Positions 7,254 through 63,337 of a stretch of DNA of 64,000 nt are shown piece by piece. Both the position numbers and the translations under genes were made by a program. Each line of letters starts with the position of its first letter. Position 1 is the first letter of the stretch. The notes beneath the pieces were generated by a model. It was not told the DNA's origin. It saw only the letters and a program-made list of their open reading frames with translations, and searched no databases. Location: the IMG/VR virus record IMGVR_UViG_3300042473_001540, positions 124,001-188,000 of that record; one strand, given 5' to 3'.

Positions 7254-7255
7254 GC

Positions 7256-7283
7256 TTGACACTTTCCTTAAACCTGCTATAGT
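7256..7283 (+). promoter_or_regulatory. sigma70-type early promoter
   Basis: TTGACA-N16-TATAGT (GC before -10). Confidence 0.6.
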
Positions 7284-7300
7284 CCTCGCAGGAGACACAC

Positions 7301-47361: not shown

Positions 47362-47381
47362 ACTCAGCTACTAGAGTTACC

Positions 47382-47428
47382 AAGAACAAGGGTGCAGCGT
47401 TGTGGAGCACTGCACCTTTGTTCTTTTT
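47382..47428 (+). terminator. intrinsic terminator (possibly bidirectional)
   Basis: AAGAACAAGGGTGCAG / CTGCACCTTTGTTCTT plus T-run. Confidence 0.75.
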
Positions 47429-47569
47429 AGCTACTGCGTTCCTTTCATATGCACTAGCAAGGTTGCGATCCTCAAAAGGATTTATGATACCTCAAGCCAA
47501 ATCAACTTTCTACGTGTAAGGTTGTTTGTGAATCAGTCTTCCCCGCGTGCACGTCTATAGCACCATAGG

Positions 47570-47609
47570 TGAAAACGGAGGACAATATGCCCTCCGTTTT
47601 CATGTTTTT
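47570..47609. terminator. terminator-like hairpin at the end of the inverted island
   Basis: TGAAAACGGAGG / CCTCCGTTTTCA 12-bp stem. Confidence 0.7.
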
Positions 47610-47621
47610 GCATAACTTAAA

Positions 47622-47930
47622 TTATCCGTTCAAAATGGTCTTGATACGTGTAATGAGATCTTCGTTGCGCCAAGTGTCCCTTATAGCATCATACGCATCA
47701 TTGTCCCACACTGTAATCCCTCGACGACTGCTTCCTCTTGTTTGCGTGCTGCCATCTGGTCTTGTGTCAGTAACAAATGGCCCAAGCTCAATCTCAGCCC
47801 GCACAGAACGGTTCACAATGCTTTCATAAATTTCAGCAATAACAAACTCATTTGTTACTACTCTTTCACTTAAAACAATTTCAGTAGTTATTGTTTGTGG
47901 ATCAATAATTGATCCCACTGTCTCACTCAT
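47622..47930 (-). CDS. hypothetical protein (late; possible fibre accessory)
   Basis: 102 aa, AAGGAG SD, exact TATAAATA at 47955-47962 on minus strand. Confidence 0.7.
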   Translation of the reverse strand: MSETVGSIIDPQTITTEIVLSERVVTNEFVIAEIYESIVNRSVRAEIELGPFVTDTRPDGSTQTRGSSRRGITVWDNDAYDAIRDTWRNEDLITRIKTILNG

Positions 47931-47957
47931 GTTTTTTTCTCCTTGGATATAACATAT

Positions 47958-48833
47958 TTATATAACTTTATTGAACTCTAGTGCAGTTAGCAAGGATTTT
48001 ATTATGTCGTTGAAACGGCATTCGTTAAGTAACCCGTGTAATTGATATTTTTCAATAATAGATGTTGGTTGTCCTGAACTCATACACAAGTCGTGTAAAT
48101 CTTCTCCCCATTTCTCAATAAAAGTTTGCATATACAACCGGTTACGCAGTTGAGTTTCAGCTAAGGTTTCCGCCCCGTTCCAACTACTGCAACCGTTGAA
48201 GTGTAGCAAATAACTGCTGCAATATTTGATTTCAAAGCCTTTTTGAAGTAGGCGCAATCTATAGTCCACATCTTCACCTCCCATGTTGAACGCTTCATCA
48301 AAGCCTCCAACTTCTTGGTAAATTAGACGTGGAATTCTACATACATAGGTGGGCATGAGAAGGCGCTCAAAAGGTGCTGGTGACCGTGCAGCATGTGTGT
48401 GAGCAGCTACATTCAAATGTAGAAATCTACCACCAAATTGCTGTAGATTTAAGGTAGGGTCAAAGCCATAAAAATGAGTTTGATTACAACTGGGAATGCT
48501 CACTGTCCTGTCATTTATCACTAGACGGGTAGCCCACTTGGGGGTAAAAACAACATCATTGCTGAGGAAAACTAAATCTGCATATTGTTCATCAGCCCAT
48601 CTCAGCAATTGATTGATATTTGTGCTAAAATTCTGAGGGTTTGAATTCACATATACTAGGTTGGGATCAAAACAGTCCAAATGCCAGTTTTTAGTCCATT
48701 CTCCGTCGTTGTCAATCAACACAAACCTATCTTCTGCAGATAATTTTGTGTGTTTGAAAAAACTTGTAAGGGCTACATGTGTATATTGGTTGCTGCTTGC
48801 AACAGTTATCATCCCATATAAGGTGCCTGCCAT
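47958..48833 (-). CDS. GT2 family glycosyltransferase
   Basis: LIDN, LSNDV, VGGFDE.F..GGEDVDY.LRL. Confidence 0.85.
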   Translation of the reverse strand: MAGTLYGMITVASSNQYTHVALTSFFKHTKLSAEDRFVLIDNDGEWTKNWHLDCFDPNLVYVNSNPQNFSTNINQLLRWADEQYADLVFLSNDVVFTPKWATRLVINDRTVSIPSCNQTHFYGFDPTLNLQQFGGRFLHLNVAAHTHAARSPAPFERLLMPTYVCRIPRLIYQEVGGFDEAFNMGGEDVDYRLRLLQKGFEIKYCSSYLLHFNGCSSWNGAETLAETQLRNRLYMQTFIEKWGEDLHDLCMSSGQPTSIIEKYQLHGLLNECRFNDIIKSLLTALEFNKVI

Positions 48834-48839
48834 TTATAA

Positions 48840-49276
48840 TTGCTTTCTTGTAGGTGTATGAAACTTCCAGTGTTGCATACTTTTGTTAAAAGATCTGCTA
48901 TATGCGTGAATCTAGAGGATATTTTGTAATTCTAAGCTGTTTCATTACCAAAAAATCATAAGGTAATTACAGATCCTACAACACAGTCGTCAAGTCTCTT
49001 GGAGAATTGGTAGTAGCGACCACTTTTTTTGGACTGTATGCTATCCAATATCAAACTCATTGTGAGTATTTGCCGGCGTCGATCTCAAGTTATTTGTGCA
49101 ACCACACCAACAGGGCTGTTGATGTCTCTTATAAGGATGTGCACAAAACTATGCAAAGGATCACTTATAGTGGCAGAGAACTTTGGATTTTGTTTAATTA
49201 TGCTGTTGAGCAGTGGGCTACCTGCTCCAGGTAACGCACTGCTCAAGTGAAACTCTTTTAAATTTACTGTTTGCAT
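48840..49276 (-). pseudogene. decayed sulfotransferase gene
   Basis: SALPGAGSPLLNSIIKQNP resembles the 5'-PSB motif GLPRSGSTLL..IL.QNP; frame breaks at 49085, DRRRQIL continues in another frame, then several stops. Confidence 0.7.
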
Positions 49277-50961
49277 ACTAACATTCCCAGATCGGGAAGA
49301 TACAGGTAGTGGATATCACAGTTGAAGATTGTTATCAAGGCGTCTACCAGTGTTTCCACCAATGGCTGCCCAGCTAGATTGAAACTAGTGTTAAACAGCA
49401 ACGGTGTTTCGGTTTGTTGCCGAAAAGCATCTAGCAGCTGATACAAATGCAAGTTTTGCTCGCTGGTGACAGTTTGTACTCTGCAGGTGCCATCCACATG
49501 TGTAACTGCAGGAATCAACTCTCTTTGGCTTTCCTTCACATTTACAGCATACATCATGTAAGGGCTTTCATTGAGATTGCGCATGTCAAACCAGTCATTT
49601 GCATGTTCTGCCATCACACTCGCAGCAAAAGGGCGGAACCATTCACGATTTTTAACTTGGTTAACAATATCCTTGCCGTTGGTTACTCGAGGATCAAAAA
49701 GAATGCTTCTGTTGCCTAGTGCACGAGGCCCACCTTCACTAGCGCCTTGAAACAAAGCCACAATATTGCCTTCTGCCAGCAGTAGTGCCACTTCAGCAGG
49801 TGATGTGTCTCTCATGCTGATACCTTCAACAGAAGCAATAGTGGTTTCAATCTGATTATAGTCTGGCAACACACTCAAGTAGAGATGAGAGAGTGGTTGA
49901 GGTGTAGTATCTTGGCTCAGAACATAATAAGCATGCCGAGCTAAACCAATGGCTGTTCCACCATCATGTGCAATGGGATCAATGTAAAACTCAATATTAG
50001 GGAAACGTTCTAGATATTTGTAGTTGGCAACACAGTTGAGTGCATAACCACCACTGATTACAATGCGATTTTCTCCAGTAATGTCAATAGCACGCTCAAT
50101 CAACTTCACCATCTGCTCTTCAGTTTCTTTCTGCACATGGTAGGCTAGATTCTTGTCTTGATCTCGCACTAATTCAAAGTTATTATGCCAGTCACTTGGT
50201 TGTGTGTATCTACGCAAGTAAGGAAATCTATTCTCGTCAATGTGTGCGCCGGTGGGATATCGAGGAATCAACAAGTTCTTGTTGCCTTTATTGTTGATGA
50301 AAAAGGCAGGAATGTTGCTGTCTTCTTGGCCATAAGGAGCTAGTCCCATGGTCTTCCCAGCTTCAATAGCCCCAAATCCTAAATAATCACTTACACTCTC
50401 GTATGCCTTAACAATAGTAACATTATTATCAAATTCTTGGATACCGTTGTCGTAGTAGAGGCTGGTTTCCGCACCGTCACTGTATCTTTTGTAAACTGCG
50501 TTGAACTCATGTGGATAGCTGCAATGATAGATGCTTTCAGTTTCAAAACCCCCAGTAAGTGGTAGTCCTTCTCCCATGCTTTCTTGCACATAGCTTCCGG
50601 CCCCATCTACGACCAAGGCGCATGCTGTTTCAAAACCACTGCCATAGAAGGCATTAGCTGCATGACCCAAGTGATGTAGATGGCCCATTAGGGTAACTTG
50701 CACATTAGGACTGAATTTGCGAGCTAATGCAGCATAGGCATTCTCGTTAGTCCAAGGAAGAGTAACCCAATTAGTGGTGGTCCCACCAATGATCAAGTGG
50801 TCTACCAAATGATTAGTTAGTACCCATAGCATGGCTCTAAATGGATTACCGTCATACTTTAGGCGACTCCATCGTTCTTCCTCGCTATAAAACAGCAACT
50901 TACCGTCTTCAACAAGCGCCACACTGCTGTTGTGACCGGGATTGATGGCCATTATTTTCAT
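49264..50961 (-). CDS. O-carbamoyltransferase (NodU/CmcH/TobZ family)
   Basis: GHNSS, EEERWSRLK, HHLGHA, VDGAG, GKTMGLAPYG, GGYALNC.AN, GPRALGNRS, RPFA, NTSFN. Confidence 0.93.
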   Translation of the reverse strand: MKIMAINPGHNSSVALVEDGKLLFYSEEERWSRLKYDGNPFRAMLWVLTNHLVDHLIIGGTTTNWVTLPWTNENAYAALARKFSPNVQVTLMGHLHHLGHAANAFYGSGFETACALVVDGAGSYVQESMGEGLPLTGGFETESIYHCSYPHEFNAVYKRYSDGAETSLYYDNGIQEFDNNVTIVKAYESVSDYLGFGAIEAGKTMGLAPYGQEDSNIPAFFINNKGNKNLLIPRYPTGAHIDENRFPYLRRYTQPSDWHNNFELVRDQDKNLAYHVQKETEEQMVKLIERAIDITGENRIVISGGYALNCVANYKYLERFPNIEFYIDPIAHDGGTAIGLARHAYYVLSQDTTPQPLSHLYLSVLPDYNQIETTIASVEGISMRDTSPAEVALLLAEGNIVALFQGASEGGPRALGNRSILFDPRVTNGKDIVNQVKNREWFRPFAASVMAEHANDWFDMRNLNESPYMMYAVNVKESQRELIPAVTHVDGTCRVQTVTSEQNLHLYQLLDAFRQQTETPLLFNTSFNLAGQPLVETLVDALITIFNCDIHYLYLPDLGMLVCKQ

Positions 50962-51893
50962 CAGCGTGTTTTCCTTTCAATATCTGCAACAATCTTTTGA
51001 TAGATGTCGTCTAGTTCTTTGGTTGAGAATTTCATTGTGCCTTCATTCAGCCTATTGCTGAGATTTACGTCCAGACCAGCAATACGAATAGGACTATATT
51101 TCCTAGCAGCAGGCTTTTCAATTATTTGAAAGTAATCTGGATAGCTGGTGTTCTTGGGAAACGTACTCCCAATAATTACTGTGCCTGGTACTCCAGAGGC
51201 TCTAGCAATATGCTGGCCTACACTGTCACATCCTACAAAATAGTCAGAGTTGGCAACTAGAGCTGACCAAACTCTTAAATCAGCAGTGTATTTGGCACTC
51301 CAGTTGTCGTCTTTCAATTGAAAGTCAGGCTCGCCAAAAAAGATCATGTTGTATTTTTGATTAAGACGCCGGCTCAGGCTCAAATAGTCGTTTGAGCTTA
51401 AGCTTCTGCTTTCTTCGTCAATCACTGTGGCACGATCCAGTTTGGCACCACGGCCAAAGGGTTGAAATACAATAGTTTTGTTCTTTTTGCTCACACTTTT
51501 GAGATCAGCTATGGTATTCTTGGCTACTAGAGTTTCTTGTTGATTGAATGCCAAGCGTGGTGGCAATAAATCACTGTGATCTGTAGTTTGGTTGATTTCC
51601 CTGTCAAAAGCTTCAGCCAAACTTATCTCTTGCCTAAAATATGCTGGGATACGATAAGGCTCCGGGGTTACTATTTGATCAGCATTCTTGACTACGTTGT
51701 CAAAAACACCTTTTGTATCAAGATTGTAGGTGCGATCTTGCAGCTCGGGAATACCCCAGTATAAGAAATCCCATGCCCCAACCAACACAGCCCATTCGCT
51801 GTTGGGATGCAATCGACCGTATTTGATTAATGCAGGAATAGCGGTGATTACTCTACCAGCACCACCGTCTATCCAAAATATCTTTTTTGTCAT
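50961..51893 (-). CDS. GT-B (GT9-like) glycosyltransferase
   Basis: DGGAGRVI.AIPAL, FQPFG, FVGCDSVGQHIA. Confidence 0.65.
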   Translation of the reverse strand: MTKKIFWIDGGAGRVITAIPALIKYGRLHPNSEWAVLVGAWDFLYWGIPELQDRTYNLDTKGVFDNVVKNADQIVTPEPYRIPAYFRQEISLAEAFDREINQTTDHSDLLPPRLAFNQQETLVAKNTIADLKSVSKKNKTIVFQPFGRGAKLDRATVIDEESRSLSSNDYLSLSRRLNQKYNMIFFGEPDFQLKDDNWSAKYTADLRVWSALVANSDYFVGCDSVGQHIARASGVPGTVIIGSTFPKNTSYPDYFQIIEKPAARKYSPIRIAGLDVNLSNRLNEGTMKFSTKELDDIYQKIVADIERKTR

Positions 51894-52015
51894 TCTAGTT
51901 CCTCGAAGCTTCAAGATATTATAAGGCAAATTGACTATTTTTGCCAAAATTTAAGATTCATCTGCCTATAATAGACTAAAAAGCTGTTGAGAACTTGACC
52001 AACACTTGTAGGTAG

Positions 52016-52714
52016 TCACAATTGCCGGCCTTTTGTCTGTCCCAGCCCTGTGTACCATTGTAGGAAGTCACCCTGATATTGCTTATAGCCGCCGTGCTTG
52101 CAAGTGATTGTGGTGTCAAGATATATGGGAAATCCGCCTTCCTGAAGTTTTTCAAACATACGTATGTCCTCACTCATAAGACCGGTGTTGGTAACTATCA
52201 CATCACAGATCATTCGGCGTTGCTTCATGTCTTTGGGATCAATATAGGCTTGACTGGTGTTCCACAAATGGTTTATAGCTTGTCGACTCATGCGTGCAAA
52301 TCCTGTGCCCAAGCCATCAACTTCCATCAAACCAGTTTGCGGGTCAATAGGGCGTTTAGTCATTTGTCTTACAACATATTCTGGACGATCCCCTTTTTTG
52401 GGATATGTGCCACCCACAACATCTACAGGATGATCCAGTAGTTTAAAAAACTGTTGCGGGGTCCATTCAATATCTTGATCAATCCATACGAGATCATCAA
52501 CACCGATCTCATATGCTAATTGCAAGGTGTCATTTCTAGCTCTTTGAATCAATGCATCGAAGCTGACCCATAAGGGTAAAAGTTCAATGTTTCTTTTTTC
52601 AGCAGCTTTAGTAGTATAAAATAAACTGCTAGTGTAGCTGACCTCTACCTTGCCATCATAGCTAGGGGTGCCTATCATTACTCTGCGACGAGTTGATTGA
52701 TTAAAATTTGCCAT
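52016..52714 (-). CDS. GT-A fold glycosyltransferase-like protein
   Basis: IGTPSY, IQRARN, WIDQD (DxD), GTGF, SED. Confidence 0.75.
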   Translation of the reverse strand: MANFNQSTRRRVMIGTPSYDGKVEVSYTSSLFYTTKAAEKRNIELLPLWVSFDALIQRARNDTLQLAYEIGVDDLVWIDQDIEWTPQQFFKLLDHPVDVVGGTYPKKGDRPEYVVRQMTKRPIDPQTGLMEVDGLGTGFARMSRQAINHLWNTSQAYIDPKDMKQRRMICDVIVTNTGLMSEDIRMFEKLQEGGFPIYLDTTITCKHGGYKQYQGDFLQWYTGLGQTKGRQL

Positions 52715-53586: not shown

Positions 53587-53597
53587 AAGCCTAAAGT

Positions 53598-56500
53598 CTA
53601 CACACCTTTGGCAGTGAGTGCAAGTTCAAGAGCTGTCACACGCTGATTGAGCTGATCGTTGCTTTCAGCCAACTCTTGCACAGCTCGAATCAACACAGGG
53701 AACACGTTAGCTACTGTGGCTTCAAGCTTCTCTGGGTTGTCCTCAAGCACCAAATGCAGCCAGTCTTGTAGATTATATCGATTGCTGACTTCCAGTACTT
53801 CTTGAGCAATAAATCCAGCGCTCTTGACCCCTACTCGGCTGCCATCTCTAGTATTCCATGTGAATTTTACTGGACGTAGATCACGTATCAGCTGCAATCC
53901 CAAAGGAATATCTTCGATGTCAGTTTTGTCTCTAGCATCAGACAAAGCAGTAATAGTAGTTACCTGAGCTCGCAGTGTAGTAATGCTGGAATCACCAAAA
54001 GTTATTGTGTTGTTGCTGGTTGCTGTTGCTCCACTTGCACCGCATCCCAAAAACACGTTGTTACTGCCATTTGTGTTGCTCGTACCTGCTGATCGTCCTA
54101 TTGCAGTGTTGTTTGTGCCATTGGTATTCTGCTGTAGGGCAGCGCCGCCAATTGCTATGTTTGAATTGGTGGTATTGTTCCTTAGAGCACATGCCCCCAA
54201 TGCAATGTTGTCACTGCCACAAAAGTTAGTGCCAAGGGCATCAAAGCCCAGGCCTATATTATTGATACCACTTGTATTAAATTGGAGTGCCCAACAACCA
54301 ACTGCAATGTTATTGCTACCAGTTGTATTGCATCGTAGAGCACAAGCACCGATAGCTGTATTATTACTACCATTTTGGTTGCAACAAAGCGCAGCTAGGC
54401 CAAATGCCATGTTAAATAGCCCAGTGCTGCTGGTATTGGATGTGCCTATTTTATAACTGCTAGTGCAGTCCAAACACGCATATCCACAACAGCCCACAGG
54501 GTTGCCGTTTATAGCAAATCCATTCCCATCTATAGCCAGTCGCAGACAACTGCCAGCAGCAATCAGCACACAAGATACACTGCCTGCTGCTGGTGTTACA
54601 TTGCCAATTACCGTGTTGTTGAACCCAGTTGTGATCAGACTTCCAGCGTTTTGGCCAATTGCTATGTTACATGTTCCAGTGGTGTTGGCAGTCAGCGCAC
54701 CAATACCCAGTGCTATGTTACCAGTCCCAGTAGTATTCTGCTGTAGGGCAGCGCCGCCAATTGCTATGTTTGAATTGGTGGTATTGTTCCTTAGAGCACA
54801 TGCCCCCAATGCAATGTTGTCACAGCCACCAGGGTTAATTCCAAGGGCATCAAAGCCCATGCCTATGTTATTGTTACCACTTGTATTAAATTGGAGTGCT
54901 AAACAACCAACTGCAATGTTGTGACACCCGCTAGTATTGCATCGTAGAGCAGACGCACCGATAGCTGTATTGCTACAACCATTACGGTTGCAACAAAGCG
55001 CAGCTAGGCCAAATGCCATGTTAAATAGCCCAGTGCTGCTGGTATTGGATGTGCCTATTTTATAACTGCTAGTGCAGTCCAAACACGCATATCCACAACA
55101 GCCCACAGGGTTGCCGTTTATAGCAAATCCATTCCCATCTATAGCCAGTCGCAGACAACTGCCAGCAGCAATCAGCACACAAGATACACTGCCTGCTGCT
55201 GGTGTTACATTGCCAATTACCGTGTTGTTGAACCCAGTTGTGATCAGACTTCCAGCGTTTTGGCCAATTGCTATGTTACATGTTCCAGTGGTGTTGGCAG
55301 TCAGCGCACCAATACCCAGTGCTATGTTACCAGTCCCAGTAGTATTCTGCGATAGGGCAAAGTAACCAATTGCTATGTTGCAACCGGTGGTGTTTGAGCA
55401 AAGGGCCAATGCCCCCAATGCTATGTTGTCACTTCCATTCAAGTTAGTGCCTAGGGCATTAACTCCCATGCCTATGTTATTGCAACCTAGTGTGTTGAAT
55501 TGAAGTGCCAAACAACCAATTGCAATATTATGAGACCCGTTCTGGTTGCATCGTAGAGCAGACGCACCGATAGCTGTATTGCTACAACCAGTTAAATTAC
55601 AACAAAGCGCCCCTTGGCCAAATGCCATGTTAAATGTCCCAGCACTGCTGGACATAAATGTGCCTATTTTATAACTGGAAGTGCAGTCCAAACATGCATA
55701 TCCACAGCTACCAATAGATGCTCCATTAACATAAAGCCCAGTTCCGTCTACTCGCAGTCGTTCACATGCGCCAGCACCAATCAATACAGTGCAAACCAAA
55801 CCCCCGGTGCCAGACAAATTGCCAATTACCGTGTTGTTGAACCCAGTGGTTATTAGGGAGCCAGCGTTTTGGCCAATTGCTATGTTACATGTTCCAGTGG
55901 TGTTGGCAGTCAGCGCACCAATACCCAGTGCTATGTTAAATGTGCCATTGGTATTCTGCTGTAGGGCAGCGCCGCCAATTGCTATGTTTGAATTGGTAAG
56001 ATTGTTCCTTAGAGCACATGCCCCCAATGCAATGTTGTCACAGCCACCAGGGTTAATGCCAAGGGCATCAAAGCCCATGCCTATGTTATTGTTACCAGTT
56101 AGGTTTAATTGGAGTGCCAAACAACCAACTGCAATGTTATTGCTACCAGCAGTATTGCATCGTAGAGCAGACGCACCGATAGCTGTATTGCTACTACCAT
56201 TACGGTTGCAACAAAGCGCACCTAGGCCAAATGCCATGTTATATAACCCAGTGCTGCTGGACATAAATGTGCCTATTTTATAACTGCTAGTGCAGTCCAA
56301 AGACGCATATCCACAGCTACCAATAGATGCCCCATTAACATAAAGCCCACTTGAGTCTACTTTCAGTCGTTCACAACTGCCAGCACCAATCAATACAGTG
56401 TTATTCAAACCCGTAGTGCCAGACAAATTGCCAATTATTGTGTTGTTAGATCCAGTTACAACATTTCCAGCTCCTTGGCCAATTGCTATGTTACATGTTC

Positions 56501-59500
56501 CAACGGCGTTTGCACTCAGCGCACCAATACCCAGTGCTATGTTAAATGTGCCACTGCAATTCTGCTGTAGGGCAGCGCCGCCAATTGCTATGTTTGAATT
56601 GGTCTGATTGTTCCTTAGAGCACATGCCCCCAATGCAATGTTGTCACTGCCACCAGAGGTAGTGCCAAGGGTGCCAAGGGCATCAAAGCCCATGCCTATG
56701 TTATTGTTACCACTTGTATTAAATTGGAGTGCCAGACAACCAACTGCAATGTTATTGCTACCAGTTGTATTGCATCGTAGAGCAGACGCACCGATAGCTG
56801 TATTATTACTACCATTTAGATTAAGACAAAGCGCAGCTAGGCCAAATGCCATGTTATATAACCCAGTGCTGCTGGACATAAATGTGCCTATTTTATAACT
56901 GCTATAGACGTCCAAACACGCATATCCACAGCTACCAATAGATGCCCCATTAACATAAAGCCCACTTGAGTCTACTTTCAGTCGTTCACAACTGCCAGCA
57001 CCAATCAATACAGTGTTATTCAAACCCGTAGTGCCAGACAAATTGCCAATTATTGTGTTGTTAGATCCAGTTACAACATTTCCAGCTCCTTGGCCAATTG
57101 CTATGTTACATGTTCCAACGGCGTTTGCACTCAGCGCACCAATACCCAGTGCTATGTTAAATGTGCCACTGCAATTCTGCTGTAGGGCAGCGCCGCCAAT
57201 TGCTATGTTTGAATTGGTCTGATTGTTCCTTAGAGCACATGCCCCCAATGCAATGTTGTCACTGCCACCAGAGGTAGTGCCAAGGGTGCCAAGGGCATCA
57301 AAGCCCATGCCTATGTTATTGTTACCAGTTAGGTTAAGTTGGAGTGCTAAACAACCAACTGCAATATTGTGACACCCGCTAGTATTGCATCGTAGAGCAG
57401 ACGCACCGATAGCTGTATTGCTACAACCATTTCGGTTACAACAAAGCGCACCTTGGCCAAATGCCATGTTAAATGTCCCAGTGCTGCTGGTATTGAATGT
57501 GCCTATTTTATAACTGCTAGTGCAGTCCAAACACGCATATCCGCAACAGCCCACACCGCTGCCGTTTATAGCAAATCCATTCACATCTATAGCCAGTCGC
57601 TGACAACTGCCAGCAGCAATCAGCACACAACATACACTGCCGGCTGCTGGTGACAAATTGCCAATTATTGTGTTGTTGAACCCAGTTGTGATCAGACTTC
57701 CAGCGAGTTGGCCAATTGCTATGTTACATATTCCAGCGGTGTTTGCAGTCAGCGCACCAATACCCAGTGCTATGTTAAATGTGCCACTGGTATTCTGCTG
57801 TAGGGCAGCGCCGCCAATTGCTATGTTTGAATTGGTAATATTGTTCCTTAGAGCACATGCCCCCAATGCAATGTTGTCACTGCCATTAAAATTAGTGCCA
57901 AGGGCATCAAAGCCCATGCCTATGTTATTGTTACCACTTGTATTAAATTGGAGTGCCAAACAACCAACTGCAATGTTATTGCTACCAGTTGTATTGCATC
58001 GTAGAGCACTCGCACCGATAGCTGTATTGCTACAACCATTTCGGTTACAACAAAGCGCACCTTGGCCAAAAGCAAAGTTGTTTGTTCCTGTACTGACTGT
58101 AAGGCCGTTACCAACCTTATAGCTGGCATAGATGTCCAAATTGGCAGTAGTAGCCGCAACACCTGTTAAAGCAGCGCCGCAACCAAAATAACATCTTGCA
58201 CACACGTCCCCTGTGCCGTTGTTGACAACCAAACAGTTTGCGTCAACTCTTAGTCTTTCGTTTGTTCCAGCGCCTATCAACACTGTGTTCACACAATCAG
58301 CTGTGCCAGCCAAGTTACCAATTACTGTATTACTGCACCCAGTTGTTATTGAAAAACCTGCACAAACGCCTATACCAATGTTGCTGTTACCAGTTGTGTT
58401 GCAGTTCAGGGCCATGAATCCAAGTGCTGTATTGAAACAGCCTATAGTATTTGACTTAAGACTATTCCCGCCAACCGCAGTATTGCACAAACCTATTGTG
58501 TTAGCTGTAAGGCTGCAAGTGCCTATACCAACATTTTCCACTCCTGTGGTATTGGCGTCTACAGCATAAGCCCCAATTCCAATGTTGTTAAAGCCTGAGG
58601 TATTAGCCCCCAATGCAAAGGCACCAAAACCTATGTTTTGGCATCCTATTGTATTGTTTTGAAGTACTTGCTCACCAACCGCAGTGTTGTAGCCACCAGT
58701 TGTAGTCCTTCTCAAGGCAAAATGTCCCAGAGCCACATTGGCTGTTCCCTGTGTGCCACTTACGCAACAAAGAGCCCCGTTACCAACACCAATGTTACCA
58801 CACGGCCCGCCTCCTAACATCATGGTGTCAATGCCTATTGCGATATTACTGCGCCCAGTTGTGCTTGCACACATGCTGCTGCTGCCAAATGCCAAGTTTT
58901 GACATCCAAAACCGTTGTTGACCAAAGCTAGACAACCAACTGCAATGTTATCTGCTCCAGTAGCAGTAGTATTGCCAGCATTATATCCCAACTGCACATT
59001 CGACCCAACAGGAGTGTTGGCATAAACTGTCCCCAAACTTGTGGGAGTAGCAGCAGACACACTTCCGCCGCTAATGCCAGTTAAACCAGCACCACAGCCA
59101 AAGAAGCAGCGAGCACACACATCACCAGTGCCATTGTTTACAACTAGACAATTGGCGTCAACACGGATACGTTCAGTAGCCCCTGCGCCAATCAATACAG
59201 TGGCGGTGAGGCCAGCACAACCTGATAAATTACCTATAATAGTATTGCTGGTTCCGGTTGTGATATTACCCCCACTGCTGTTGCCAATTGCTATATTACA
59301 TGCACCAGTAGTTGTGTTGAGTAGCGAAAGAACACCAATGCCAATGTTGCAGTTGCCAGTATTAGCGGCCAAAGCACATCTGCCCATTGCAATGTTACGA
59401 ACTCCTACTGTATTGCTGGCCAAAGCAAATGGCCCAACAGCAACGTTGCTACCACCCGATGTGTTTGCAGCTAGTGAGCATGCGCCAAGAGCAATATTGC

Positions 59501-60728
59501 ATGCTCCAATGGTGTTGGCACATGATGCGTAGTGGCCGATAGCTGTATTCAAGGTTCCTGTTGTGTTGGCAGAGAGGGCAAACGATCCAAATGCAGCATT
59601 GTCTGAACCAACTGAGCTGCTGCACATGCTGGAGAATCCCAAAGCAATATTGTTGCAGCCTGTGGTGTTGCAGCGCAAAGCATTTGAGCCCACAGCGATG
59701 TTCCATAAGCCGTTAGTGAGTCCTCCCAGGGCACTGCTGCCAACAGCTACGTTGTCTGATCCACTCACACTATTGAACAGGGCACAGTCACCAACAGCAA
59801 TGTTCCGACTGCCACTGGTGTTGTTAAACAAACTGTTGTTGCCAACAGCAATGTTCAAGTTGCCTTGGGTATTGCAACGCAAGGCGCTTGTGCCCAGTGC
59901 AGTATTGTAGCTGCCTGTTGTGTTGCACAACAGGGTGGCTTCACCAAATGCGGCATTGAAGCTGCCAGTGGTATTAGTGCACAGACTGTTCCGCCCAACA
60001 GCCACATTCATTTGGCCCACAGTGTTGGCATATAGTGCACACCGCCCTACAGCCACGTTCCAATTGCCAGTTGTGTTTGAGAACAACGCGTCGCTGCCAA
60101 GGGCAGTATTTTCTTGCCCAATCGTATTGGATTTGAGCGCGTCTACCCCCACGGCAGTGTTTTGAACGCCAGTTGTGTTATTGCTGAGCGCCAAACAACC
60201 AATAGCAATATTTTCTGTGCCTGTGCTGGTTGTGCTGCCTGCACAGTATCCTATTGCAGTGTTGGAGTTGTTGCTTGTGAGGCCATACACAGTTCCCAAT
60301 TGAATTGGAGTTGCTGCTGAAACTGCCCCGCCAGAAATGCCAGTTAAACCAGCACCACAACCAAAGAAGCAGCGGGCACACACATCACCAGTGCCATTGT
60401 TGACAACTAGACAATTGGCGTCAACACGCAATCTCTCAGTTGTGCCAGCACCAATCAGCACAGTGTCAACGAGGCCTGGGGTACCAGCCAACTGCCCAAT
60501 CACTGTGTTGGCACAGCCTGTTGTGATGCTACCACCAGCATAGACACCTAGACCCATGTTCAGAGAGCCGGTTGAGACAGCCAGAAGAGCCCCACCACCA
60601 AAAGCTGTATTGCTAACACCTGTGTTGAGATTACAAAGTGCATTGATACCCACGGCTGTGTTAAGTGCAGTCGTATTGCATCCTGTACTATTGGGAATCA
60701 CTATATTCCCACAAATTTTTATCGCCAT
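53598..60728 (-). CDS. giant Cys/Asn/Gly-rich repeat fibre with C-terminal peptidase S74 intramolecular chaperone
   Basis: 14-residue N(I/T)A(I/V)GxxALxxNxxG repeats; SDARDK..I, LRPV.F.W, GFIAQEV, terminal coiled coil. Confidence 0.88.
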   Translation of the reverse strand: MAIKICGNIVIPNSTGCNTTALNTAVGINALCNLNTGVSNTAFGGGALLAVSTGSLNMGLGVYAGGSITTGCANTVIGQLAGTPGLVDTVLIGAGTTERLRVDANCLVVNNGTGDVCARCFFGCGAGLTGISGGAVSAATPIQLGTVYGLTSNNSNTAIGYCAGSTTSTGTENIAIGCLALSNNTTGVQNTAVGVDALKSNTIGQENTALGSDALFSNTTGNWNVAVGRCALYANTVGQMNVAVGRNSLCTNTTGSFNAAFGEATLLCNTTGSYNTALGTSALRCNTQGNLNIAVGNNSLFNNTSGSRNIAVGDCALFNSVSGSDNVAVGSSALGGLTNGLWNIAVGSNALRCNTTGCNNIALGFSSMCSSSVGSDNAAFGSFALSANTTGTLNTAIGHYASCANTIGACNIALGACSLAANTSGGSNVAVGPFALASNTVGVRNIAMGRCALAANTGNCNIGIGVLSLLNTTTGACNIAIGNSSGGNITTGTSNTIIGNLSGCAGLTATVLIGAGATERIRVDANCLVVNNGTGDVCARCFFGCGAGLTGISGGSVSAATPTSLGTVYANTPVGSNVQLGYNAGNTTATGADNIAVGCLALVNNGFGCQNLAFGSSSMCASTTGRSNIAIGIDTMMLGGGPCGNIGVGNGALCCVSGTQGTANVALGHFALRRTTTGGYNTAVGEQVLQNNTIGCQNIGFGAFALGANTSGFNNIGIGAYAVDANTTGVENVGIGTCSLTANTIGLCNTAVGGNSLKSNTIGCFNTALGFMALNCNTTGNSNIGIGVCAGFSITTGCSNTVIGNLAGTADCVNTVLIGAGTNERLRVDANCLVVNNGTGDVCARCYFGCGAALTGVAATTANLDIYASYKVGNGLTVSTGTNNFAFGQGALCCNRNGCSNTAIGASALRCNTTGSNNIAVGCLALQFNTSGNNNIGMGFDALGTNFNGSDNIALGACALRNNITNSNIAIGGAALQQNTSGTFNIALGIGALTANTAGICNIAIGQLAGSLITTGFNNTIIGNLSPAAGSVCCVLIAAGSCQRLAIDVNGFAINGSGVGCCGYACLDCTSSYKIGTFNTSSTGTFNMAFGQGALCCNRNGCSNTAIGASALRCNTSGCHNIAVGCLALQLNLTGNNNIGMGFDALGTLGTTSGGSDNIALGACALRNNQTNSNIAIGGAALQQNCSGTFNIALGIGALSANAVGTCNIAIGQGAGNVVTGSNNTIIGNLSGTTGLNNTVLIGAGSCERLKVDSSGLYVNGASIGSCGYACLDVYSSYKIGTFMSSSTGLYNMAFGLAALCLNLNGSNNTAIGASALRCNTTGSNNIAVGCLALQFNTSGNNNIGMGFDALGTLGTTSGGSDNIALGACALRNNQTNSNIAIGGAALQQNCSGTFNIALGIGALSANAVGTCNIAIGQGAGNVVTGSNNTIIGNLSGTTGLNNTVLIGAGSCERLKVDSSGLYVNGASIGSCGYASLDCTSSYKIGTFMSSSTGLYNMAFGLGALCCNRNGSSNTAIGASALRCNTAGSNNIAVGCLALQLNLTGNNNIGMGFDALGINPGGCDNIALGACALRNNLTNSNIAIGGAALQQNTNGTFNIALGIGALTANTTGTCNIAIGQNAGSLITTGFNNTVIGNLSGTGGLVCTVLIGAGACERLRVDGTGLYVNGASIGSCGYACLDCTSSYKIGTFMSSSAGTFNMAFGQGALCCNLTGCSNTAIGASALRCNQNGSHNIAIGCLALQFNTLGCNNIGMGVNALGTNLNGSDNIALGALALCSNTTGCNIAIGYFALSQNTTGTGNIALGIGALTANTTGTCNIAIGQNAGSLITTGFNNTVIGNVTPAAGSVSCVLIAAGSCLRLAIDGNGFAINGNPVGCCGYACLDCTSSYKIGTSNTSSTGLFNMAFGLAALCCNRNGCSNTAIGASALRCNTSGCHNIAVGCLALQFNTSGNNNIGMGFDALGINPGGCDNIALGACALRNNTTNSNIAIGGAALQQNTTGTGNIALGIGALTANTTGTCNIAIGQNAGSLITTGFNNTVIGNVTPAAGSVSCVLIAAGSCLRLAIDGNGFAINGNPVGCCGYACLDCTSSYKIGTSNTSSTGLFNMAFGLAALCCNQNGSNNTAIGACALRCNTTGSNNIAVGCWALQFNTSGINNIGLGFDALGTNFCGSDNIALGACALRNNTTNSNIAIGGAALQQNTNGTNNTAIGRSAGTSNTNGSNNVFLGCGASGATATSNNTITFGDSSITTLRAQVTTITALSDARDKTDIEDIPLGLQLIRDLRPVKFTWNTRDGSRVGVKSAGFIAQEVLEVSNRYNLQDWLHLVLEDNPEKLEATVANVFPVLIRAVQELAESNDQLNQRVTALELALTAKGV
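54030..58140 (-). repeat. seven tandem ~609-615 bp internal repeats in the fibre gene
   Basis: Equivalent anchor (YKIG/YKVG codons) at 54445, 55054, 55663, 56272, 56887, 57502, 58111; long blocks identical at nucleotide level; outer limits approximate. Confidence 0.92.
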
Positions 60729-60832
60729 AGTGGATTACACCTTGTTTTCGTTTTCAGAGTTCTTTCCTGCACTACAACAAAAATGGCTGAACCATCTTCG
60801 CTCTCCCCTGCTGGATCAAACTCGGCTACCCC

Positions 60833-60839
60833 TATTTAC
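60833..60839 (-). promoter_or_regulatory. late-promoter-like box for the fibre/glycosylation operon
   Basis: GTAAATA on minus strand about 100 nt before ATG 60728. Confidence 0.4.
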
Positions 60840-61001
60840 GGAATGGTCTTGGAGCTAGGTAGTTGATTACCGTTTTGCCTCTACCTTTTTAAGGTGTCCT
60901 GACACCGTCGGGAAAAATTTTTTCCCAAATTTCCACGTGACTTAAGAGTTTTTGGTTGTATATTATGCTGAATATGCCACTACGCAAGGAGGCCACTTAT
61001 T

Positions 61002-62275: not shown

Positions 62276-62305
62276 AATAGGCGGAAGTTATTTCCGCCTA
62301 TTTTT
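62276..62305 (+). terminator. intrinsic terminator overlapping the 3' end of the convergent endonuclease gene
   Basis: AATAGGCGGAA / TTCCGCCTATT plus T-run. Confidence 0.7.
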
Positions 62306-63223: not shown

Positions 63224-63294
63224 GCTGAATGCTCCTTCATAGCGTTTAGAGCGGTCGGAGAGGTTAGAGGCTCGCGGACCGCAATTGTATTTAG
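63224..63294 (-). promoter_or_regulatory. late promoter and structured leader of the endonuclease
   Basis: CTAAATA 63288-63294 (minus); GCGGTC/GACCGC stem 63251-63282. Confidence 0.5.
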
Positions 63295-63337
63295 TGTCAA
63301 TTTTGACACGTACACACATAATTGTACAAACTCTGCT

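What the first reader, a model, noticed from the sequence alone, without database searches (positions are those of the whole stretch)
47430..61000. Inverted fibre-plus-glycosylation island splits the MoxR/vWA gene pair
Seen: MoxR (46147-47361) and its metallopeptidase-vWA partner (61002-62264) are both on +, separated by ~13.5 kb of minus-strand genes: giant fibre, four GTs, a carbamoyltransferase, a dead sulfotransferase and a small late gene, closed by two terminator hairpins. Established: MoxR and vWA partners are usually neighbours; NodU-family enzymes carbamoylate sugars. Inference: a swappable cassette encoding a fibre and its own machinery for a carbamoylated (formerly also sulfated) glycan, i.e. 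phage-encoded virion glycosylation.
Basis: partly seen in the sequence, partly recalled or inferred. Interest (0 to 1): 0.62.

Follow-up and report, generated by a model that had tools for sequence, protein, structure and literature searches.

The report
Fibre-plus-sugar-enzyme cassette splitting a gene pair
A jumbo phage has acquired, between two genes that are normally neighbours, a 13.6-kb block that encodes a giant repeat tail fibre followed by sugar-, carbamoyl- and (now dead) sulfate-transferring enzymes. The same fibre-then-enzymes arrangement recurs in many unrelated aquatic phages, which suggests, but does not prove, that these phages decorate their own fibre with a glycan.

Summary
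MoxR-like ATPase (46147-47361, +) and DUF2201 metallopeptidase-vWA (61002-62264, +) are separated by a minus-strand block. In transcription order it holds a 2376-aa fibre, a GT1/4, a GT-A, a GT9-like enzyme, a NodU-type carbamoyltransferase, a sulfotransferase pseudogene, a GT2-like enzyme and a 102-aa protein. It ends in a hairpin.

In 57 of 64 related loci the two flanking genes lie under 300 bp apart. Relatives with about 94% identical MoxR carry only a homing endonuclease there. One relative (L012) keeps a decayed copy of the vWA 5' end beside the island, so the island was gained.

The cassette is collinear in about 25 divergent viral contigs, there with two intact sulfotransferases, and sits elsewhere in their genomes. 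Its GT9-like/carbamoyltransferase core lies among tail-fibre genes in T4-like cyanophages. Two 32-kb pelagiphages have just fibre plus a GT9-like enzyme.

The enzymes have no membrane segments. No thymidylate synthase or dCMP hydroxymethylase homologue was found in the 310 kb held (76% complete). Fibre glycosylation is therefore the best reading (about 0.5) but is untested. The conserved Thr/Ser turn of the fibre repeat is not an acceptor signature. 'Swappable' is only partly supported.

The parts
46147..47361 (+). MoxR-like AAA+ ATPase (404 aa), left flank of the island
   Evidence: Pfam AAA_5 1.1e-5, AAA and AAA_3; phrog_1297 2.7e-90. 41% identical to the PA5oct ATPase.
47375..47432 (.). Bidirectional hairpin terminator after MoxR. 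It belongs to the conserved flank; homology with island-free relatives ends inside or just after it.
   Evidence: Inverted repeat of 23-nt arms, 83% complementary. Terminator-like hit. blastn breakpoints at 47416 (L011) and 47429 (L013).
47433..47569 (.). Lineage-specific spacer at the MoxR-proximal end of the island. In L012 this position holds a NUMOD3 homing endonuclease and a decayed copy of the vWA upstream region and first ~55 nt.
   Evidence: No homology to L011, L012 or L013. Fossil in L012 7127-7315.
47570..47602 (-). Hairpin 20 nt after the last cassette gene; probable terminator of the cassette operon
   Evidence: 15-nt arms, 93% complementary, 3-nt loop. Conserved with L012, whose homology resumes at 47571.
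47622..47930 (-). 102-aa conserved cassette protein of unknown function (sm102)
   Evidence: No Pfam, PHROG or NCBIfam hit. Present at the cassette end in 10 or more divergent contigs, 45-69% identity.
47958..48833 (-). Probable GT-A/GT2-like glycosyltransferase (291 aa)
   Evidence: Sub-threshold Pfam GT2-family hits at E ~1e-3. MftF glycosyltransferase 4e-5. A DxD-like motif is visible in the sequence. Orthologues occur in cassettes of other contigs.
48837..49276 (-). Sulfotransferase pseudogene (internal deletion of about residues 73-219; the PAPS-loop region is altered)
   Evidence: tblastn of the intact L012 sulfotransferase (PF13469, 2.2e-10): residues 1-72 at 69% identity, E 9e-25; weak C-terminal match.
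49264..50961 (-). NodU/CmcH-type O-carbamoyltransferase (565 aa)
   Evidence: Carbam_trans_C 6.5e-60, Carbam_trans_N 4.7e-24, phrog_1601 2.8e-156, NodU 6.5e-40.
50961..51893 (-). GT9-like (heptosyltransferase-fold) glycosyltransferase, 310 aa. The true start is the ATG at 51893, not the TTG at 51947.
   Evidence: Start is conserved in 21 homologues. AF2 model pLDDT 86.6. Foldseek top hits are WaaF 1psw (1.5e-10), WaaC, GT9 3tov and TibC 4rap. Atlas clusters carry PF01075.
51938..52103 (-). Faint remnants of a second sulfotransferase gene that is intact in L012 and in divergent cassettes
   Evidence: tblastn of the L012 292-aa sulfotransferase: ends only, E 0.005-0.008. A 90-aa remnant survives in L008-L010.
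52016..52714 (-). GT-A fold glycosyltransferase (232 aa)
   Evidence: phrog_1574 2.5e-18 and phrog_34859 7e-8. Atlas structural neighbours are GT2/Anp1-like, TM 0.87-0.92.
52678..53586 (-). GT-B GT1/GT4-type glycosyltransferase (302 aa). It starts 11 nt after the fibre stop.
   Evidence: Glyco_trans_1_4 2.2e-10, Glycos_transf_1 6.4e-10, phrog_2170.
53598..60728 (-). Giant fibre (2376 aa). It has at least 93 copies of a 17-residue repeat (N-[IT]-A-h-G-x-x-A-L-x-x-N-T-[TS]-G-x-x), nine connector motifs, six 203-205-aa super-repeats and 132 Cys.
   Evidence: phrog_23837, phrog_4636 and phrog_6002. The same length to within 2 aa in independent contigs. Homologous to tail fibres of cultured aquatic phages.
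53601..53942 (-). C-terminal intramolecular-chaperone (Peptidase_S74) domain of the fibre. This domain marks a trimeric fibre that cleaves itself.
   Evidence: PF13884 3e-11, residues 2263-2314. The domain begins with the S-D-x-R-x-K type motif.
60729..61001 (.). Island-borne intergenic region. It carries the fibre RBS and presumably the fibre promoter on the minus strand, and a new upstream region and RBS for vWA on the plus strand.
   Evidence: Not homologous to the vWA upstream region of L011 or L013; homology resumes at 61000. Sequence read.
61002..62264 (+). DUF2201 metallopeptidase plus VWA-like protein (420 aa), right flank
   Evidence: DUF2201_N 2.5e-42, DUF2201 2e-16. 86% identical to the L011 orthologue from residue 1.
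62288..63319 (-). NUMOD3-containing homing endonuclease next to the right flank
   Evidence: PF07460 1.2e-25, phrog_655.

Best explanation
The region is a conserved, operon-like cassette: a fibre gene plus glycan-tailoring genes. It was inserted into the 5' end of the vWA gene of an ancestrally adjacent MoxR-vWA pair, at an intergenic site that often collects accessory genes in this phage group.

The first gene encodes a trimeric tail-fibre-type protein with an intramolecular-chaperone C-terminus. Most of its length is a 17-residue repeat that probably forms a beta-solenoid.

The genes that follow it on the same strand, closely spaced or overlapping, encode soluble enzymes:
- a GT4-type glycosyltransferase;
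- a GT-A glycosyltransferase;
- a GT9-like (heptosyltransferase-fold) enzyme coupled to a NodU-type O-carbamoyltransferase;
- a GT2-like enzyme.

The ancestral cassette also had two sulfotransferases. In this phage one is a pseudogene and the other is deleted.

Inference: these enzymes work in the infected cell's cytoplasm on host sugar nucleotides and carbamoyl phosphate. They build a short carbamoylated glycan, possibly heptose-containing and formerly sulfated, directly on the fibre protein before or during virion assembly. The closest mechanistic model is the heptosylation of AIDA-I and TibA beta-helix repeats by TibC/AAH.

Shown: the anatomy, the insertion and its polarity, the conservation of the fibre-to-enzyme linkage, and the fold assignments.

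Inferred: the acceptor (the fibre), the sugar (heptose), and the timing (late).
For: Insertion and its polarity:
- MoxR and vWA lie under 300 bp apart in 57 of 64 loci, and are adjacent in Phosso.
- L011 and L013 (MoxR 94% identical) have only an HNH endonuclease in the gap. L012, which is 93% identical in nucleotides to L013 in the flank, has the island.
- L012 7127-7315 is a decayed copy of the vWA upstream region plus its first ~55 nt, next to the island's end hairpin.

Cassette conservation:
- The same genes occur in the same order and strand after a homologous fibre in about 25 divergent contigs, with proteins 40-75% identical.
- In 45 non-redundant fibre loci, 17 have a cassette enzyme starting within 1 kb after the fibre stop. 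Background jumbo-phage DNA (826 kb) gave 0 hits.
- Three different gene orders all keep the enzymes directly after the fibre.

The linkage spans phage types:
- The GT9-like/carbamoyltransferase pair sits among tail-fibre genes, and beside ADP-heptose synthesis genes, in P-SSM2, S-CAM1 and S-SSM7.
- HTVC111P and HTVC112P (31-32 kb) have the fibre followed, stop overlapping start, by a GT that is distantly homologous to the GT9-like enzyme.
- In L107 the cassette follows non-homologous tail-fibre genes and lies near the tail sheath gene.

Nature of the enzymes and genome:
- No enzyme has a membrane-spanning segment. No Wzx-, Wzy- or WecA-type genes are in the block.
- The GT9-like model matches WaaF, WaaC and the protein heptosyltransferase TibC. 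TibC heptosylates autotransporter beta-helix repeats (PMC4358343).
- The held genome has no thymidylate synthase or dCMP hydroxymethylase homologue.
- The same genome holds a second block in which an S74 fibre (collagen-like) is followed by GT2 genes.

Precedents:
- Mycobacteriophage virion glycans (as summarised in PMC12619734).
- Virion glycoproteins in jumbo phage XacN1 (PMC5852040).
Against: - There is no direct evidence for any glycan on any protein.
- Fibres of this family exist without adjacent enzymes: Venkman, CRP-1 and CRP-7, and 28 of the 45 loci. Glycosylation is therefore not needed for the fold.
- The conserved Thr/Ser turn of the repeat is just as frequent in fibres without enzymes (0.90/0.89) as with them (0.85/0.67). 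It gives no acceptor signature.
- The GT9-like enzyme has no Pfam or PDB sequence-level hit. It is shorter than TibC, and fold alone cannot tell a lipid-linked or sugar acceptor from a protein acceptor.
- The fibre loci in the linkage count were found with a profile built from enzyme-linked fibres. This biases the 17/45 figure upward.
- The beta-solenoid model of the repeat is only moderate (pLDDT 61 overall, 70-89 in the repeats) and has no significant PDB match.
- Cyanophage homologues have been read in the literature as 'LPS genes' of unknown role (PMC3037559).
Confidence: 0.5

Rival explanations
1. The enzymes remodel a host envelope glycan (LPS core, O-antigen or exopolysaccharide) during infection. 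This could mask receptors against superinfection or stop progeny from sticking to debris. Under this reading the enzymes travel with the fibre gene only because both are host-range cargo.
For: - GT9 enzymes are classically LPS-core heptosyltransferases.
- From memory: NodU-family carbamoyltransferases act on saccharides, and P. aeruginosa LPS core carries carbamoyl-heptose.
- Cyanophage homologues are annotated as LPS genes.
- GT1/GT4 and GT2 enzymes are typical of surface-polysaccharide clusters.
Against: - No membrane-embedded component, flippase, polymerase or initiating phosphoglycosyl transferase is present, and none of the enzymes has a TM segment.
- The enzymes start 11-125 nt after the stop of a structural gene, on its strand, across 40%-identity divergence and three different gene orders.
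- A 32-kb siphovirus keeps just fibre plus GT with overlapping stop and start.
- From memory: marine picocyanobacterial LPS is reported to lack heptose, yet their phages carry heptose synthesis next to the pair.
Confidence: 0.22
2. The enzymes glycosylate another virion protein (capsid, sheath or another fibre), or make a virion-associated free glycan, rather than modifying the adjacent fibre itself.
For: - In mycobacteriophages the glycans sit on capsid and tail-tube subunits.
- In L107 the cassette follows non-homologous fibre proteins.
- The genome has several other giant fibre-like proteins.
Against: The tightest and most widely conserved neighbour is always a fibre gene immediately upstream.
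Confidence: 0.13
3. Chance or neutral co-localisation. The block is a patchwork of unrelated accessory genes accumulated in a plastic region, with no functional link between fibre and enzymes. Some of the enzymes may be decaying.
For: - The MoxR|vWA gap collects unrelated cargo in other phages.
- Two sulfotransferases have already decayed here.
- One published view calls the cyanophage LPS clusters possible 'stuffer DNA'.
Against: - Collinearity over about 25 divergent contigs, with 17 hits in 45 kb against 0 in 826 kb.
- The remaining six genes have intact ORFs, with conserved catalytic-type motifs visible in the sequences.
- The cassette is found at different genome sites as one unit.
Confidence: 0.1
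4. DNA hypermodification. The carbamoyltransferase and glycosyltransferases modify hydroxymethylated bases of the phage DNA.
For: - A phage carbamoyltransferase makes 5-carbamoyloxymethylcytosine (PMC8670742).
- Phage GTs often glucosylate DNA.
Against: - That enzyme class co-occurs with thymidylate-synthase homologues and dCMP deaminases. In unmodified contigs carbamoyltransferases are flanked by GT1 genes, as here.
- No PF00303 homologue was found in the 310-kb record. The record is only 76% complete.
- Sulfotransferases and a fibre gene have no place in a DNA-modification pathway.
Confidence: 0.03

Closest known systems
Bacterial autotransporter heptosyltransferases (TibC/AAH) acting on AIDA-I and TibA
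   Same: - A soluble GT-B enzyme of heptosyltransferase fold is encoded next to a very long beta-solenoid repeat protein that ends up outside the cell.
- TibC is among the top structural matches of the GT9-like enzyme.
- Glycosylation happens in the cytoplasm, on repeat units (PMC4358343).
   Different: - No sequence-level similarity was detected.
- The enzyme here is 310 aa. I did not examine the iron-finger or dodecamer features of TibC.
- The substrate here would be a phage fibre with a 17-residue repeat and an S74 chaperone, not a type V secreted adhesin.
- Extra carbamoyl-, sulfo- and three further glycosyl-transferases are present.
Mycobacteriophage virion glycosylation (Che8-type; Freeman et al. 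2023, seen only through its summary in PMC12619734)
   Same: Phage-encoded glycosyltransferases decorate virion proteins in a bacterial cytoplasm.
   Different: - There the glycans are on C-termini of capsid and tail-tube subunits of siphoviruses of Gram-positive hosts.
- Here the candidate target is a repeat fibre. The enzyme set (GT9-like, carbamoyltransferase, sulfotransferases) is different, and nothing has been shown biochemically.
'LPS gene' clusters of T4-like cyanomyoviruses (P-SSM2, S-SM2, S-SSM7, S-CAM1)
   Same: - They contain orthologues of the GT9-like/carbamoyltransferase pair: 36-39% and 42-47% identity, adjacent and in the same order.
- The pair lies between tail-fibre genes.
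- P-SSM2 gp298 is a homologue of the fibre.
   Different: - The cyanophage clusters add ADP-heptose synthesis genes (HldE, GmhA, epimerase), which are absent here.
- By tblastn at E 1e-3 they lack the GT1, GT-A and GT2 genes of this cassette.
- Their function has been left open in the literature.
Giant-virus fibril and capsid glycosylation clusters (Mimivirus, PBCV-1). Mimivirus is from memory; PBCV-1 is mentioned in PMC5852040.
   Same: Virus-encoded, host-independent glycosylation of surface fibres or capsid, by gene clusters that vary between lineages.
   Different: The hosts are eukaryotic and the fibre proteins and enzymes are unrelated. No homology was tested.
Endosialidase / T5 pb1-type fibres with a C-terminal intramolecular chaperone (Peptidase_S74)
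   Same: The C-terminal S74 domain is present, with its start motif. The fibre family serves as the tail fibre in cultured phages.
   Different: - The shaft is an unusually long array of 93 or more 17-residue repeats, with 5.6% Cys.
- No enzymatic (sialidase or depolymerase) domain was detected.

Membership tests
NodU/CmcH/TobZ O-carbamoyltransferase family | Kae1-like N-terminal domain plus YrdC-like C-terminal domain (Pfam Carbam_trans_N and Carbam_trans_C) | tested here: met
   PF16861 6.5e-60 and PF02543 4.7e-24, both above cut-off. NodU NF041651 scores 6.5e-40 but is below the equivalog cut-off.
NodU/CmcH/TobZ O-carbamoyltransferase family | Carbamoyl transfer from carbamoyl phosphate/ATP to a hydroxyl of a saccharide | not testable with these tools
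   This needs an enzyme assay. The context resembles the 'unmodified-contig' class, flanked by GT1 genes (PMC8670742).
5-hydroxymethylcytosine carbamoyltransferase (DNA-modifying subclade) | Co-occurrence with a thymidylate synthase/dCMP hydroxymethylase homologue and dCMP deaminase | tested here: not met
   No PF00303 match in the 310-kb record. The neighbours are GTs and a fibre. I did not compare against the published enzyme sequence, because a sequence printed in a paper has no reference to hand in.
GT9 (ADP-heptose:LPS heptosyltransferase) family | GT-B fold that most closely matches solved GT9 structures | tested here: met
   AF2 model pLDDT 86.6. Foldseek: 1psw 1.5e-10, 2h1h, 3tov, 4rap, all at probability 1.00.
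GT9 (ADP-heptose:LPS heptosyltransferase) family | Significant match to the family profile (PF01075) | tested here: not met
   No Pfam hit at E 0.01. RfaQ scores only 0.071. PF01075 is carried only by some members of related Atlas clusters. I therefore file it as 'GT9-like', not as a member.
BAHT (TibC/AAH) protein heptosyltransferases | Heptosylation of Ser in beta-helix repeats; iron-binding dodecamer | not testable with these tools
   Only fold similarity is shown. The complex prediction could not be run.
Peptidase_S74 intramolecular-chaperone fibres | C-terminal S74 domain above the Pfam cut-off | tested here: met
   PF13884 3e-11, 43.9 bits against a cut-off of 22, residues 2263-2314.
PAPS-dependent sulfotransferases | Full-length Sulfotransfer_1/3 domain with an intact reading frame | tested here: not met
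   The window keeps only residues 1-72 plus a faint C-terminal trace. The orthologue in L012 is intact (PF13469, 2.2e-10). It is a pseudogene.
MoxR AAA+ / vWA partner pair | A MoxR-type AAA+ ATPase gene adjacent to a vWA-domain gene | tested here: met
   The domains are present. The two genes are adjacent in 57 of 64 relatives. In the window itself they are separated by 13.6 kb.
Classical mobile genomic island | Integrase, transposase or recombinase, and flanking direct repeats | tested here: not met
   No such gene lies in the block. There are no flanking repeats in the window. Only L012 shows a duplicated vWA 5' end. Homing endonucleases flank the site.
Phage virion glycosylation systems | A glycan demonstrated on a virion protein and dependent on phage GTs | not testable with these tools
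   Only gene linkage is available.

The most novel reading that the evidence does not exclude
A widespread and so far unrecognised tail-fibre glycosylation system exists in aquatic phages. Its core would be a GT9-like protein glycosyl(heptosyl)transferase, usually paired with an O-carbamoyltransferase, and often extended with further GTs and sulfotransferases. It would be found from 32-kb pelagiphages through T4-like cyanophages to jumbo phages. If so, it would explain the long-puzzling 'LPS genes' of cyanophages as enzymes that decorate the fibre with a carbamoylated and sulfated glycan. Lineage-specific loss, as of sulfation in this phage, would tune adsorption or evasion.
Probability: 0.35. 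Interest if true: 0.8.

Novelty: new variant of a known kind. Interest (0 to 1): 0.62.

Why it matters
Glycosylation of phage structural proteins has rarely been documented (PMC5852040). The cases I found are mycobacteriophages and a hint in one jumbo phage.

If the linkage found here reflects function, three things follow. First, receptor-binding fibres of very abundant marine and freshwater phages (SAR11, cyanobacterial and jumbo phages) carry phage-made glycans that can be carbamoylated and sulfated. That would affect host recognition, stickiness to organic matter, and resistance to proteases or grazers. Second, it gives a testable role to the cyanophage 'LPS genes'. Third, cultured phages carry the minimal two-gene version, so the question can be answered with ordinary virion mass spectrometry.

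Independently of function, the locus is a clean example of cassette gain at a cargo hotspot, with a molecular fossil that fixes the direction of the event. It also shows stepwise decay of part of a pathway.

Tried and rejected
- **Near-identical DNA in cultured phages.** None was found by megablast.
- **PDB sequence searches.** Searches with the GT9-like, GT-A and GT2-like proteins and with two fibre segments gave nothing meaningful. One search failed on a frame error and was corrected.
- **Fold of the fibre repeat.** The AF2 model is moderate, and Foldseek gave only weak solenoid-type rows (LRR, tailspike beta-helices), none at E <= 0.001. I call it 'probably beta-solenoid' and no more.
- **Acceptor-site idea.** N-x-S/T sequons are enriched (86 against 55 +/- 6 in shuffles), and each repeat has a T-[TS] turn. 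But the same turn is equally conserved in fibres without enzymes. I rejected it as evidence.
- **Compositional anomaly of the island.** There is none: GC 0.446 against 0.458 +/- 0.031 for the genome.
- **Flanking direct repeats in the window.** There are none.
- **Tandem Repeats Finder.** It did not report the 609-615-bp super-repeats, because its longest period is 500. They are seen in the protein instead.
- **Promoter scan.** Sigma-70-like sites are barely above shuffled expectation and were not used. I did not search for a late-promoter motif.
- **Literature.** Searches for carbamoyltransferase/heptose/tail-fibre glycosylation in phages found no description of this cassette. The Freeman 2023 paper itself is not held.
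- **Other.** The big protein searches were not needed. No alternative genetic code was used.

Full report
**What the window is.** The window is bases 124001-188000 of a 309.8-kb IMG/VR viral record that CheckV rates 76% complete. Its MoxR-like ATPase and vWA protein are 39-41% identical to those of Pseudomonas jumbo phage PA5oct. They have more distant matches in Phosso, Atu_ph07, phage G and RaK2-like phages. It is therefore an uncultured jumbo phage. No cultured phage shares near-identical DNA.

**Check of the observation.**
- On the plus strand lie a 404-aa AAA+ ATPase of MoxR type (46147-47361) and a 420-aa DUF2201 metallopeptidase/VWA-like protein (61002-62264).
- Between them all genes are on the minus strand, inside a region of about 130 kb that is otherwise almost wholly plus-stranded.
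- In transcription order the genes are:
  - a 2376-aa fibre (60728 to 53598) ending in a Peptidase_S74 intramolecular chaperone;
  - a GT1/GT4 enzyme that starts 11 nt after the fibre stop;
  - a 232-aa GT-A enzyme;
  - a protein without a Pfam hit, which turned out to be GT9-like;
  - a NodU-type carbamoyltransferase that overlaps it by one base;
  - a 430-bp gap;
  - a weak GT2-like protein;
  - a 102-aa protein.
- The gap is a dead sulfotransferase. Relative L012 has an intact 302-aa sulfotransferase there (PF13469, 2.2e-10). The window keeps its first 72 codons at 69% identity, lacks about residues 73-219, and shows only a faint C-terminal trace.
- L012 and all divergent cassettes also have a second sulfotransferase between the GT-A and GT9-like genes. 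In the window it is deleted. In L008-L010 a 90-codon remnant survives.
- The two hairpins exist. The one at 47375-47432 is a bidirectional terminator shared with island-free relatives, so it belongs to MoxR. The one at 47570-47602 is shared with L012 and closes the cassette.

**Is it an insertion, and in which direction?**
- A scan of IMG/VR with MoxR returned 80 loci.
- Where both genes are visible, vWA follows MoxR within 300 bp in 57 of 64 loci, with a median gap of 71 bp. This includes a 77%-identical relative (L015). Phosso shows the same adjacency.
- The exceptions carry cargo in the gap:
  - homing endonucleases in PA5oct, L011 and L013;
  - AMP-binding enzymes in L017;
  - two fatty-acid desaturases and a hexapeptide transferase in L047.
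- Three contigs have MoxR 94% identical to the window and about 91-93% nucleotide identity to each other. They differ at this site. L011 and L013 have about 1 kb with an HNH endonuclease. L012 has a NUMOD3 endonuclease plus the island.
- Homology between the window and L011/L013 stops at 47416/47429 and resumes at 61000/61002.
- L012 positions 7127-7315 lie between its endonuclease and the island's end hairpin. They are a decayed copy (91% to L011) of the ancestral vWA upstream region and the first ~55 nt of vWA, without a start codon. The island therefore entered the 5' end of vWA, with a duplication of that end.
- The direction is gain, not loss in the relatives.
- The window has since lost the fossil. 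The 273 bp now upstream of vWA are island DNA.
- No integrase, transposase or flanking repeat is present in the window. Base composition is unremarkable. The neighbourhood is rich in homing endonucleases, which may promote such exchanges. That link is an inference.

**The cassette is a conserved unit.**
- A scan with the GT9-like protein found 39 loci.
- In about 25 divergent contigs the same genes follow a homologous fibre in the same order and orientation: fibre, GT1, GT-A, sulfotransferase, (GT2), GT9-like, carbamoyltransferase, sulfotransferase, small protein.
- Protein identities to the window are 38-44% for the fibre, GT1 and GT2, and 65-75% for the GT9-like and carbamoyltransferase pair.
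- In these contigs no MoxR or vWA lies nearby. In the 126-kb record that holds L115, the cassette lies at about 19-33 kb, while MoxR and vWA are adjacent about 70 kb away. A 222-kb record, 93% complete, has the cassette and no MoxR or vWA at all.
- The cassette is thus a module found at different places in different phages. The window's copy is a rearranged and decayed version: the GT2 gene has moved behind the carbamoyltransferase and both sulfotransferases are lost.

**The linkage beyond jumbo phages.**
- The GT9-like/carbamoyltransferase pair is adjacent, in the same order, in T4-like cyanomyoviruses (P-SSM2, P-SSM5, S-CAM1, S-CAM3, S-SSM7) at 36-39% and 42-47% identity. There it lies between tail-fibre genes and next to ADP-heptose synthesis genes.
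- P-SSM2 gp298 is a homologue of the fibre, including the S74 end.
- The fibre family is the annotated tail fibre of cultured aquatic phages: Methylophilales phage Venkman, pelagiphages HTVC111P and HTVC112P, and roseophages CRP-1 and CRP-7.
- In the two pelagiphages (31-32 kb) the fibre gene is followed, stop overlapping start, by a 'putative glycosyl transferase'. That protein aligns with the GT9-like family profile over 226 columns (hhalign probability 68%, E 5e-5).
- Venkman, CRP-1 and CRP-7 have no such neighbour.
- A profile of fibre C-termini found at least 450 relatives in IMG/VR. Of 45 non-redundant loci with at least 2 kb downstream, 17 have a cassette enzyme starting within 1 kb after the fibre stop on the same strand. 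The same HMMs hit nothing in 826 kb of other jumbo-phage loci.
- Three gene orders occur: GT1 first, GT9-like first, or a small ORF then GT-A. All keep the enzymes directly after the fibre.
- Caveat: the profile came from enzyme-linked fibres, so the 17/45 fraction is biased upward.
- In L107 the cassette follows non-homologous tail-fibre proteins, and is followed by more sugar genes and the tail sheath gene.
- The window's own genome holds a second block in which an S74 fibre is followed by GTs. At 63-81 kb on the minus strand lie a 2512-aa protein, a 1325-aa collagen-like S74 fibre, a GT2-FkbM methyltransferase fusion and a GT2.

**What the parts are.**
- *The fibre.* It consists almost from residue 18 of a 17-residue repeat, N-[IT]-A-h-G-x-x-A-L-x-x-N-T-[TS]-G-x-x. 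There are at least 93 copies, broken by nine connector segments, and the last six modules are 203-205-aa super-repeats. It has 132 cysteines and no separate N-terminal anchor domain. Its length is the same to within two residues in independent contigs, so it is not an assembly artefact. An AF2 model of one module gives regular short strands with 17-residue spacing at pLDDT 70-89, but has no significant PDB match. The S74 domain implies a trimer that cleaves off its chaperone; this is established for the family and not tested here.
- *The GT9-like enzyme.* Its true start is the ATG at 51893, conserved in 21 homologues. The model has pLDDT 86.6. Its best structural matches are WaaF, WaaC, a Veillonella GT9 and the autotransporter heptosyltransferase TibC. 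It has no significant Pfam or PDB sequence match, hence 'GT9-like'.
- *Membrane segments.* None of the enzymes has a hydrophobic stretch compatible with a membrane helix.

**How it most likely works.**
- Shown: a fibre gene and six intact enzyme or accessory genes form a compact, same-strand unit ending in a hairpin. This unit is conserved across deep divergence, across phage morphotypes and across genome positions.
- Inferred: the unit is co-transcribed with the fibre. The soluble enzymes use host nucleotide sugars and carbamoyl phosphate to build a short glycan on the fibre in the cytoplasm. The genome lacks GmhA, so any ADP-heptose would come from the host. The GT9-like/carbamoyltransferase pair would make the conserved core, possibly carbamoyl-heptose, and the other GTs would extend or initiate it. 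In the ancestral cassette two sulfotransferases added sulfate, a capacity this lineage has lost.
- The nearest mechanistic model is TibC/AAH heptosylating the beta-helix repeats of TibA and AIDA-I (PMC4358343).
- I put about 0.5 on the fibre as acceptor.

**Rivals.**
- *Host-envelope remodelling (about 0.22).* This fits the classical roles of GT9, GT4 and GT2 enzymes and the 'LPS gene' label in cyanophages (PMC3037559). It fits poorly with the lack of any membrane component and with the fibre-coupled arrangement kept even in a 32-kb siphovirus.
- *Another virion protein as target (about 0.13).* This cannot be excluded.
- *Neutral co-localisation (about 0.1).* The conservation statistics contradict it.
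- *DNA hypermodification (about 0.03).* The DNA-acting carbamoyltransferases co-occur with thymidylate-synthase homologues, while those in unmodified contigs sit next to GT1 genes as here (PMC8670742). The record has no PF00303 homologue.

**A negative result worth stating.** The Thr/Ser pair in the N-T-[TS]-G turn looked like an obvious acceptor, and N-x-S/T sequons are enriched. However, the pair is as frequent in fibres without adjacent enzymes (0.90/0.89) as in those with them (0.85/0.67), and it is present in Venkman and CRP-1/7. It is a structural feature of the repeat. It says nothing about glycosylation.

**Novelty.**
- Phage virion glycosylation is known from mycobacteriophages (summarised in PMC12619734) and hinted at in jumbo phage XacN1 (PMC5852040).
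- I found no description of a fibre-linked cassette with a GT9-like enzyme, a carbamoyltransferase and sulfotransferases, nor of the fibre-GT pair in pelagiphages.
- I rate it a new variant of a known kind, with function still to be shown.

**Limits.**
- The Freeman 2023 paper was not readable.
- Statements about P. aeruginosa carbamoyl-heptose, picocyanobacterial LPS lacking heptose, and Mimivirus fibrils rest on my own knowledge, not on a tool result.

Noticed in passing
G000:C1:63061-81243 (outside the window; locus L128): A second minus-strand 'fibre then GTs' block in the same genome. It holds a 2512-aa protein without Pfam hits, a 1325-aa collagen-repeat fibre with an S74 C-terminus, a GT2-FkbM methyltransferase fusion (488 aa) and a GT2 (323 aa).
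   Followed up: partly
G000:C1:226433-244887 (locus L130): A third minus-strand block of giant genes: 1126 aa, 4017 aa, 194 aa, and a 603-aa protein with an S74 C-terminus. No GT was seen in the two proteins scanned.
   Followed up: partly
G000:C1:86417-93378 (locus L129): A sugar-metabolism cluster on the minus strand: a GT2 with TPR repeats, a TPR protein, and a nucleotidyltransferase-HAD phosphatase fusion. It may supply activated sugars.
   Followed up: no
G000:C1:103528-104427: A GT2-like frame interrupted by an in-frame TAA (125-aa ORF), directly before a short ORF with weak similarity to the fibre's S74 end. It may be another decayed fibre/GT pair.
   Followed up: no
window 62288-63319 (-); L012 6170-7129; L011 2344-3294; L013 5773-6495: The MoxR-vWA neighbourhood is crowded with homing endonucleases of different families (NUMOD3-type and HNH_3-type), and they differ between relatives that are about 92% identical.
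   Followed up: partly
L017 11242-14611; L047 9865-12175: In more distant phages the same MoxR|vWA gap holds metabolic cargo. L017 has split AMP-binding enzyme genes. L047 has two fatty-acid desaturases plus a hexapeptide acyltransferase.
   Followed up: partly
L153 7309-9152: After another fibre of this family come an APS-kinase/cytidylyltransferase-like protein and a papain-family protease. The first could supply PAPS for sulfation.
   Followed up: no
L170 5235-8447 (also L177, L180, L188, L191, L193, L197): A recurrent trio without any Pfam hit (about 315 aa overlapping the fibre stop, then about 620 aa, then 128 aa) follows fibres of this family in at least seven contigs. Its function is unknown.
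   Followed up: partly
window 53598-60728: The fibre contains 132 cysteines (5.6%), many at fixed repeat positions. This is unusual for a protein made in a bacterial cytoplasm.
   Followed up: no
window 60897-60926: A plus-strand hairpin followed by an A5T6 palindrome lies in the island-borne region upstream of vWA. No plus-strand gene lies before it inside the island. Its role is unknown.
   Followed up: no
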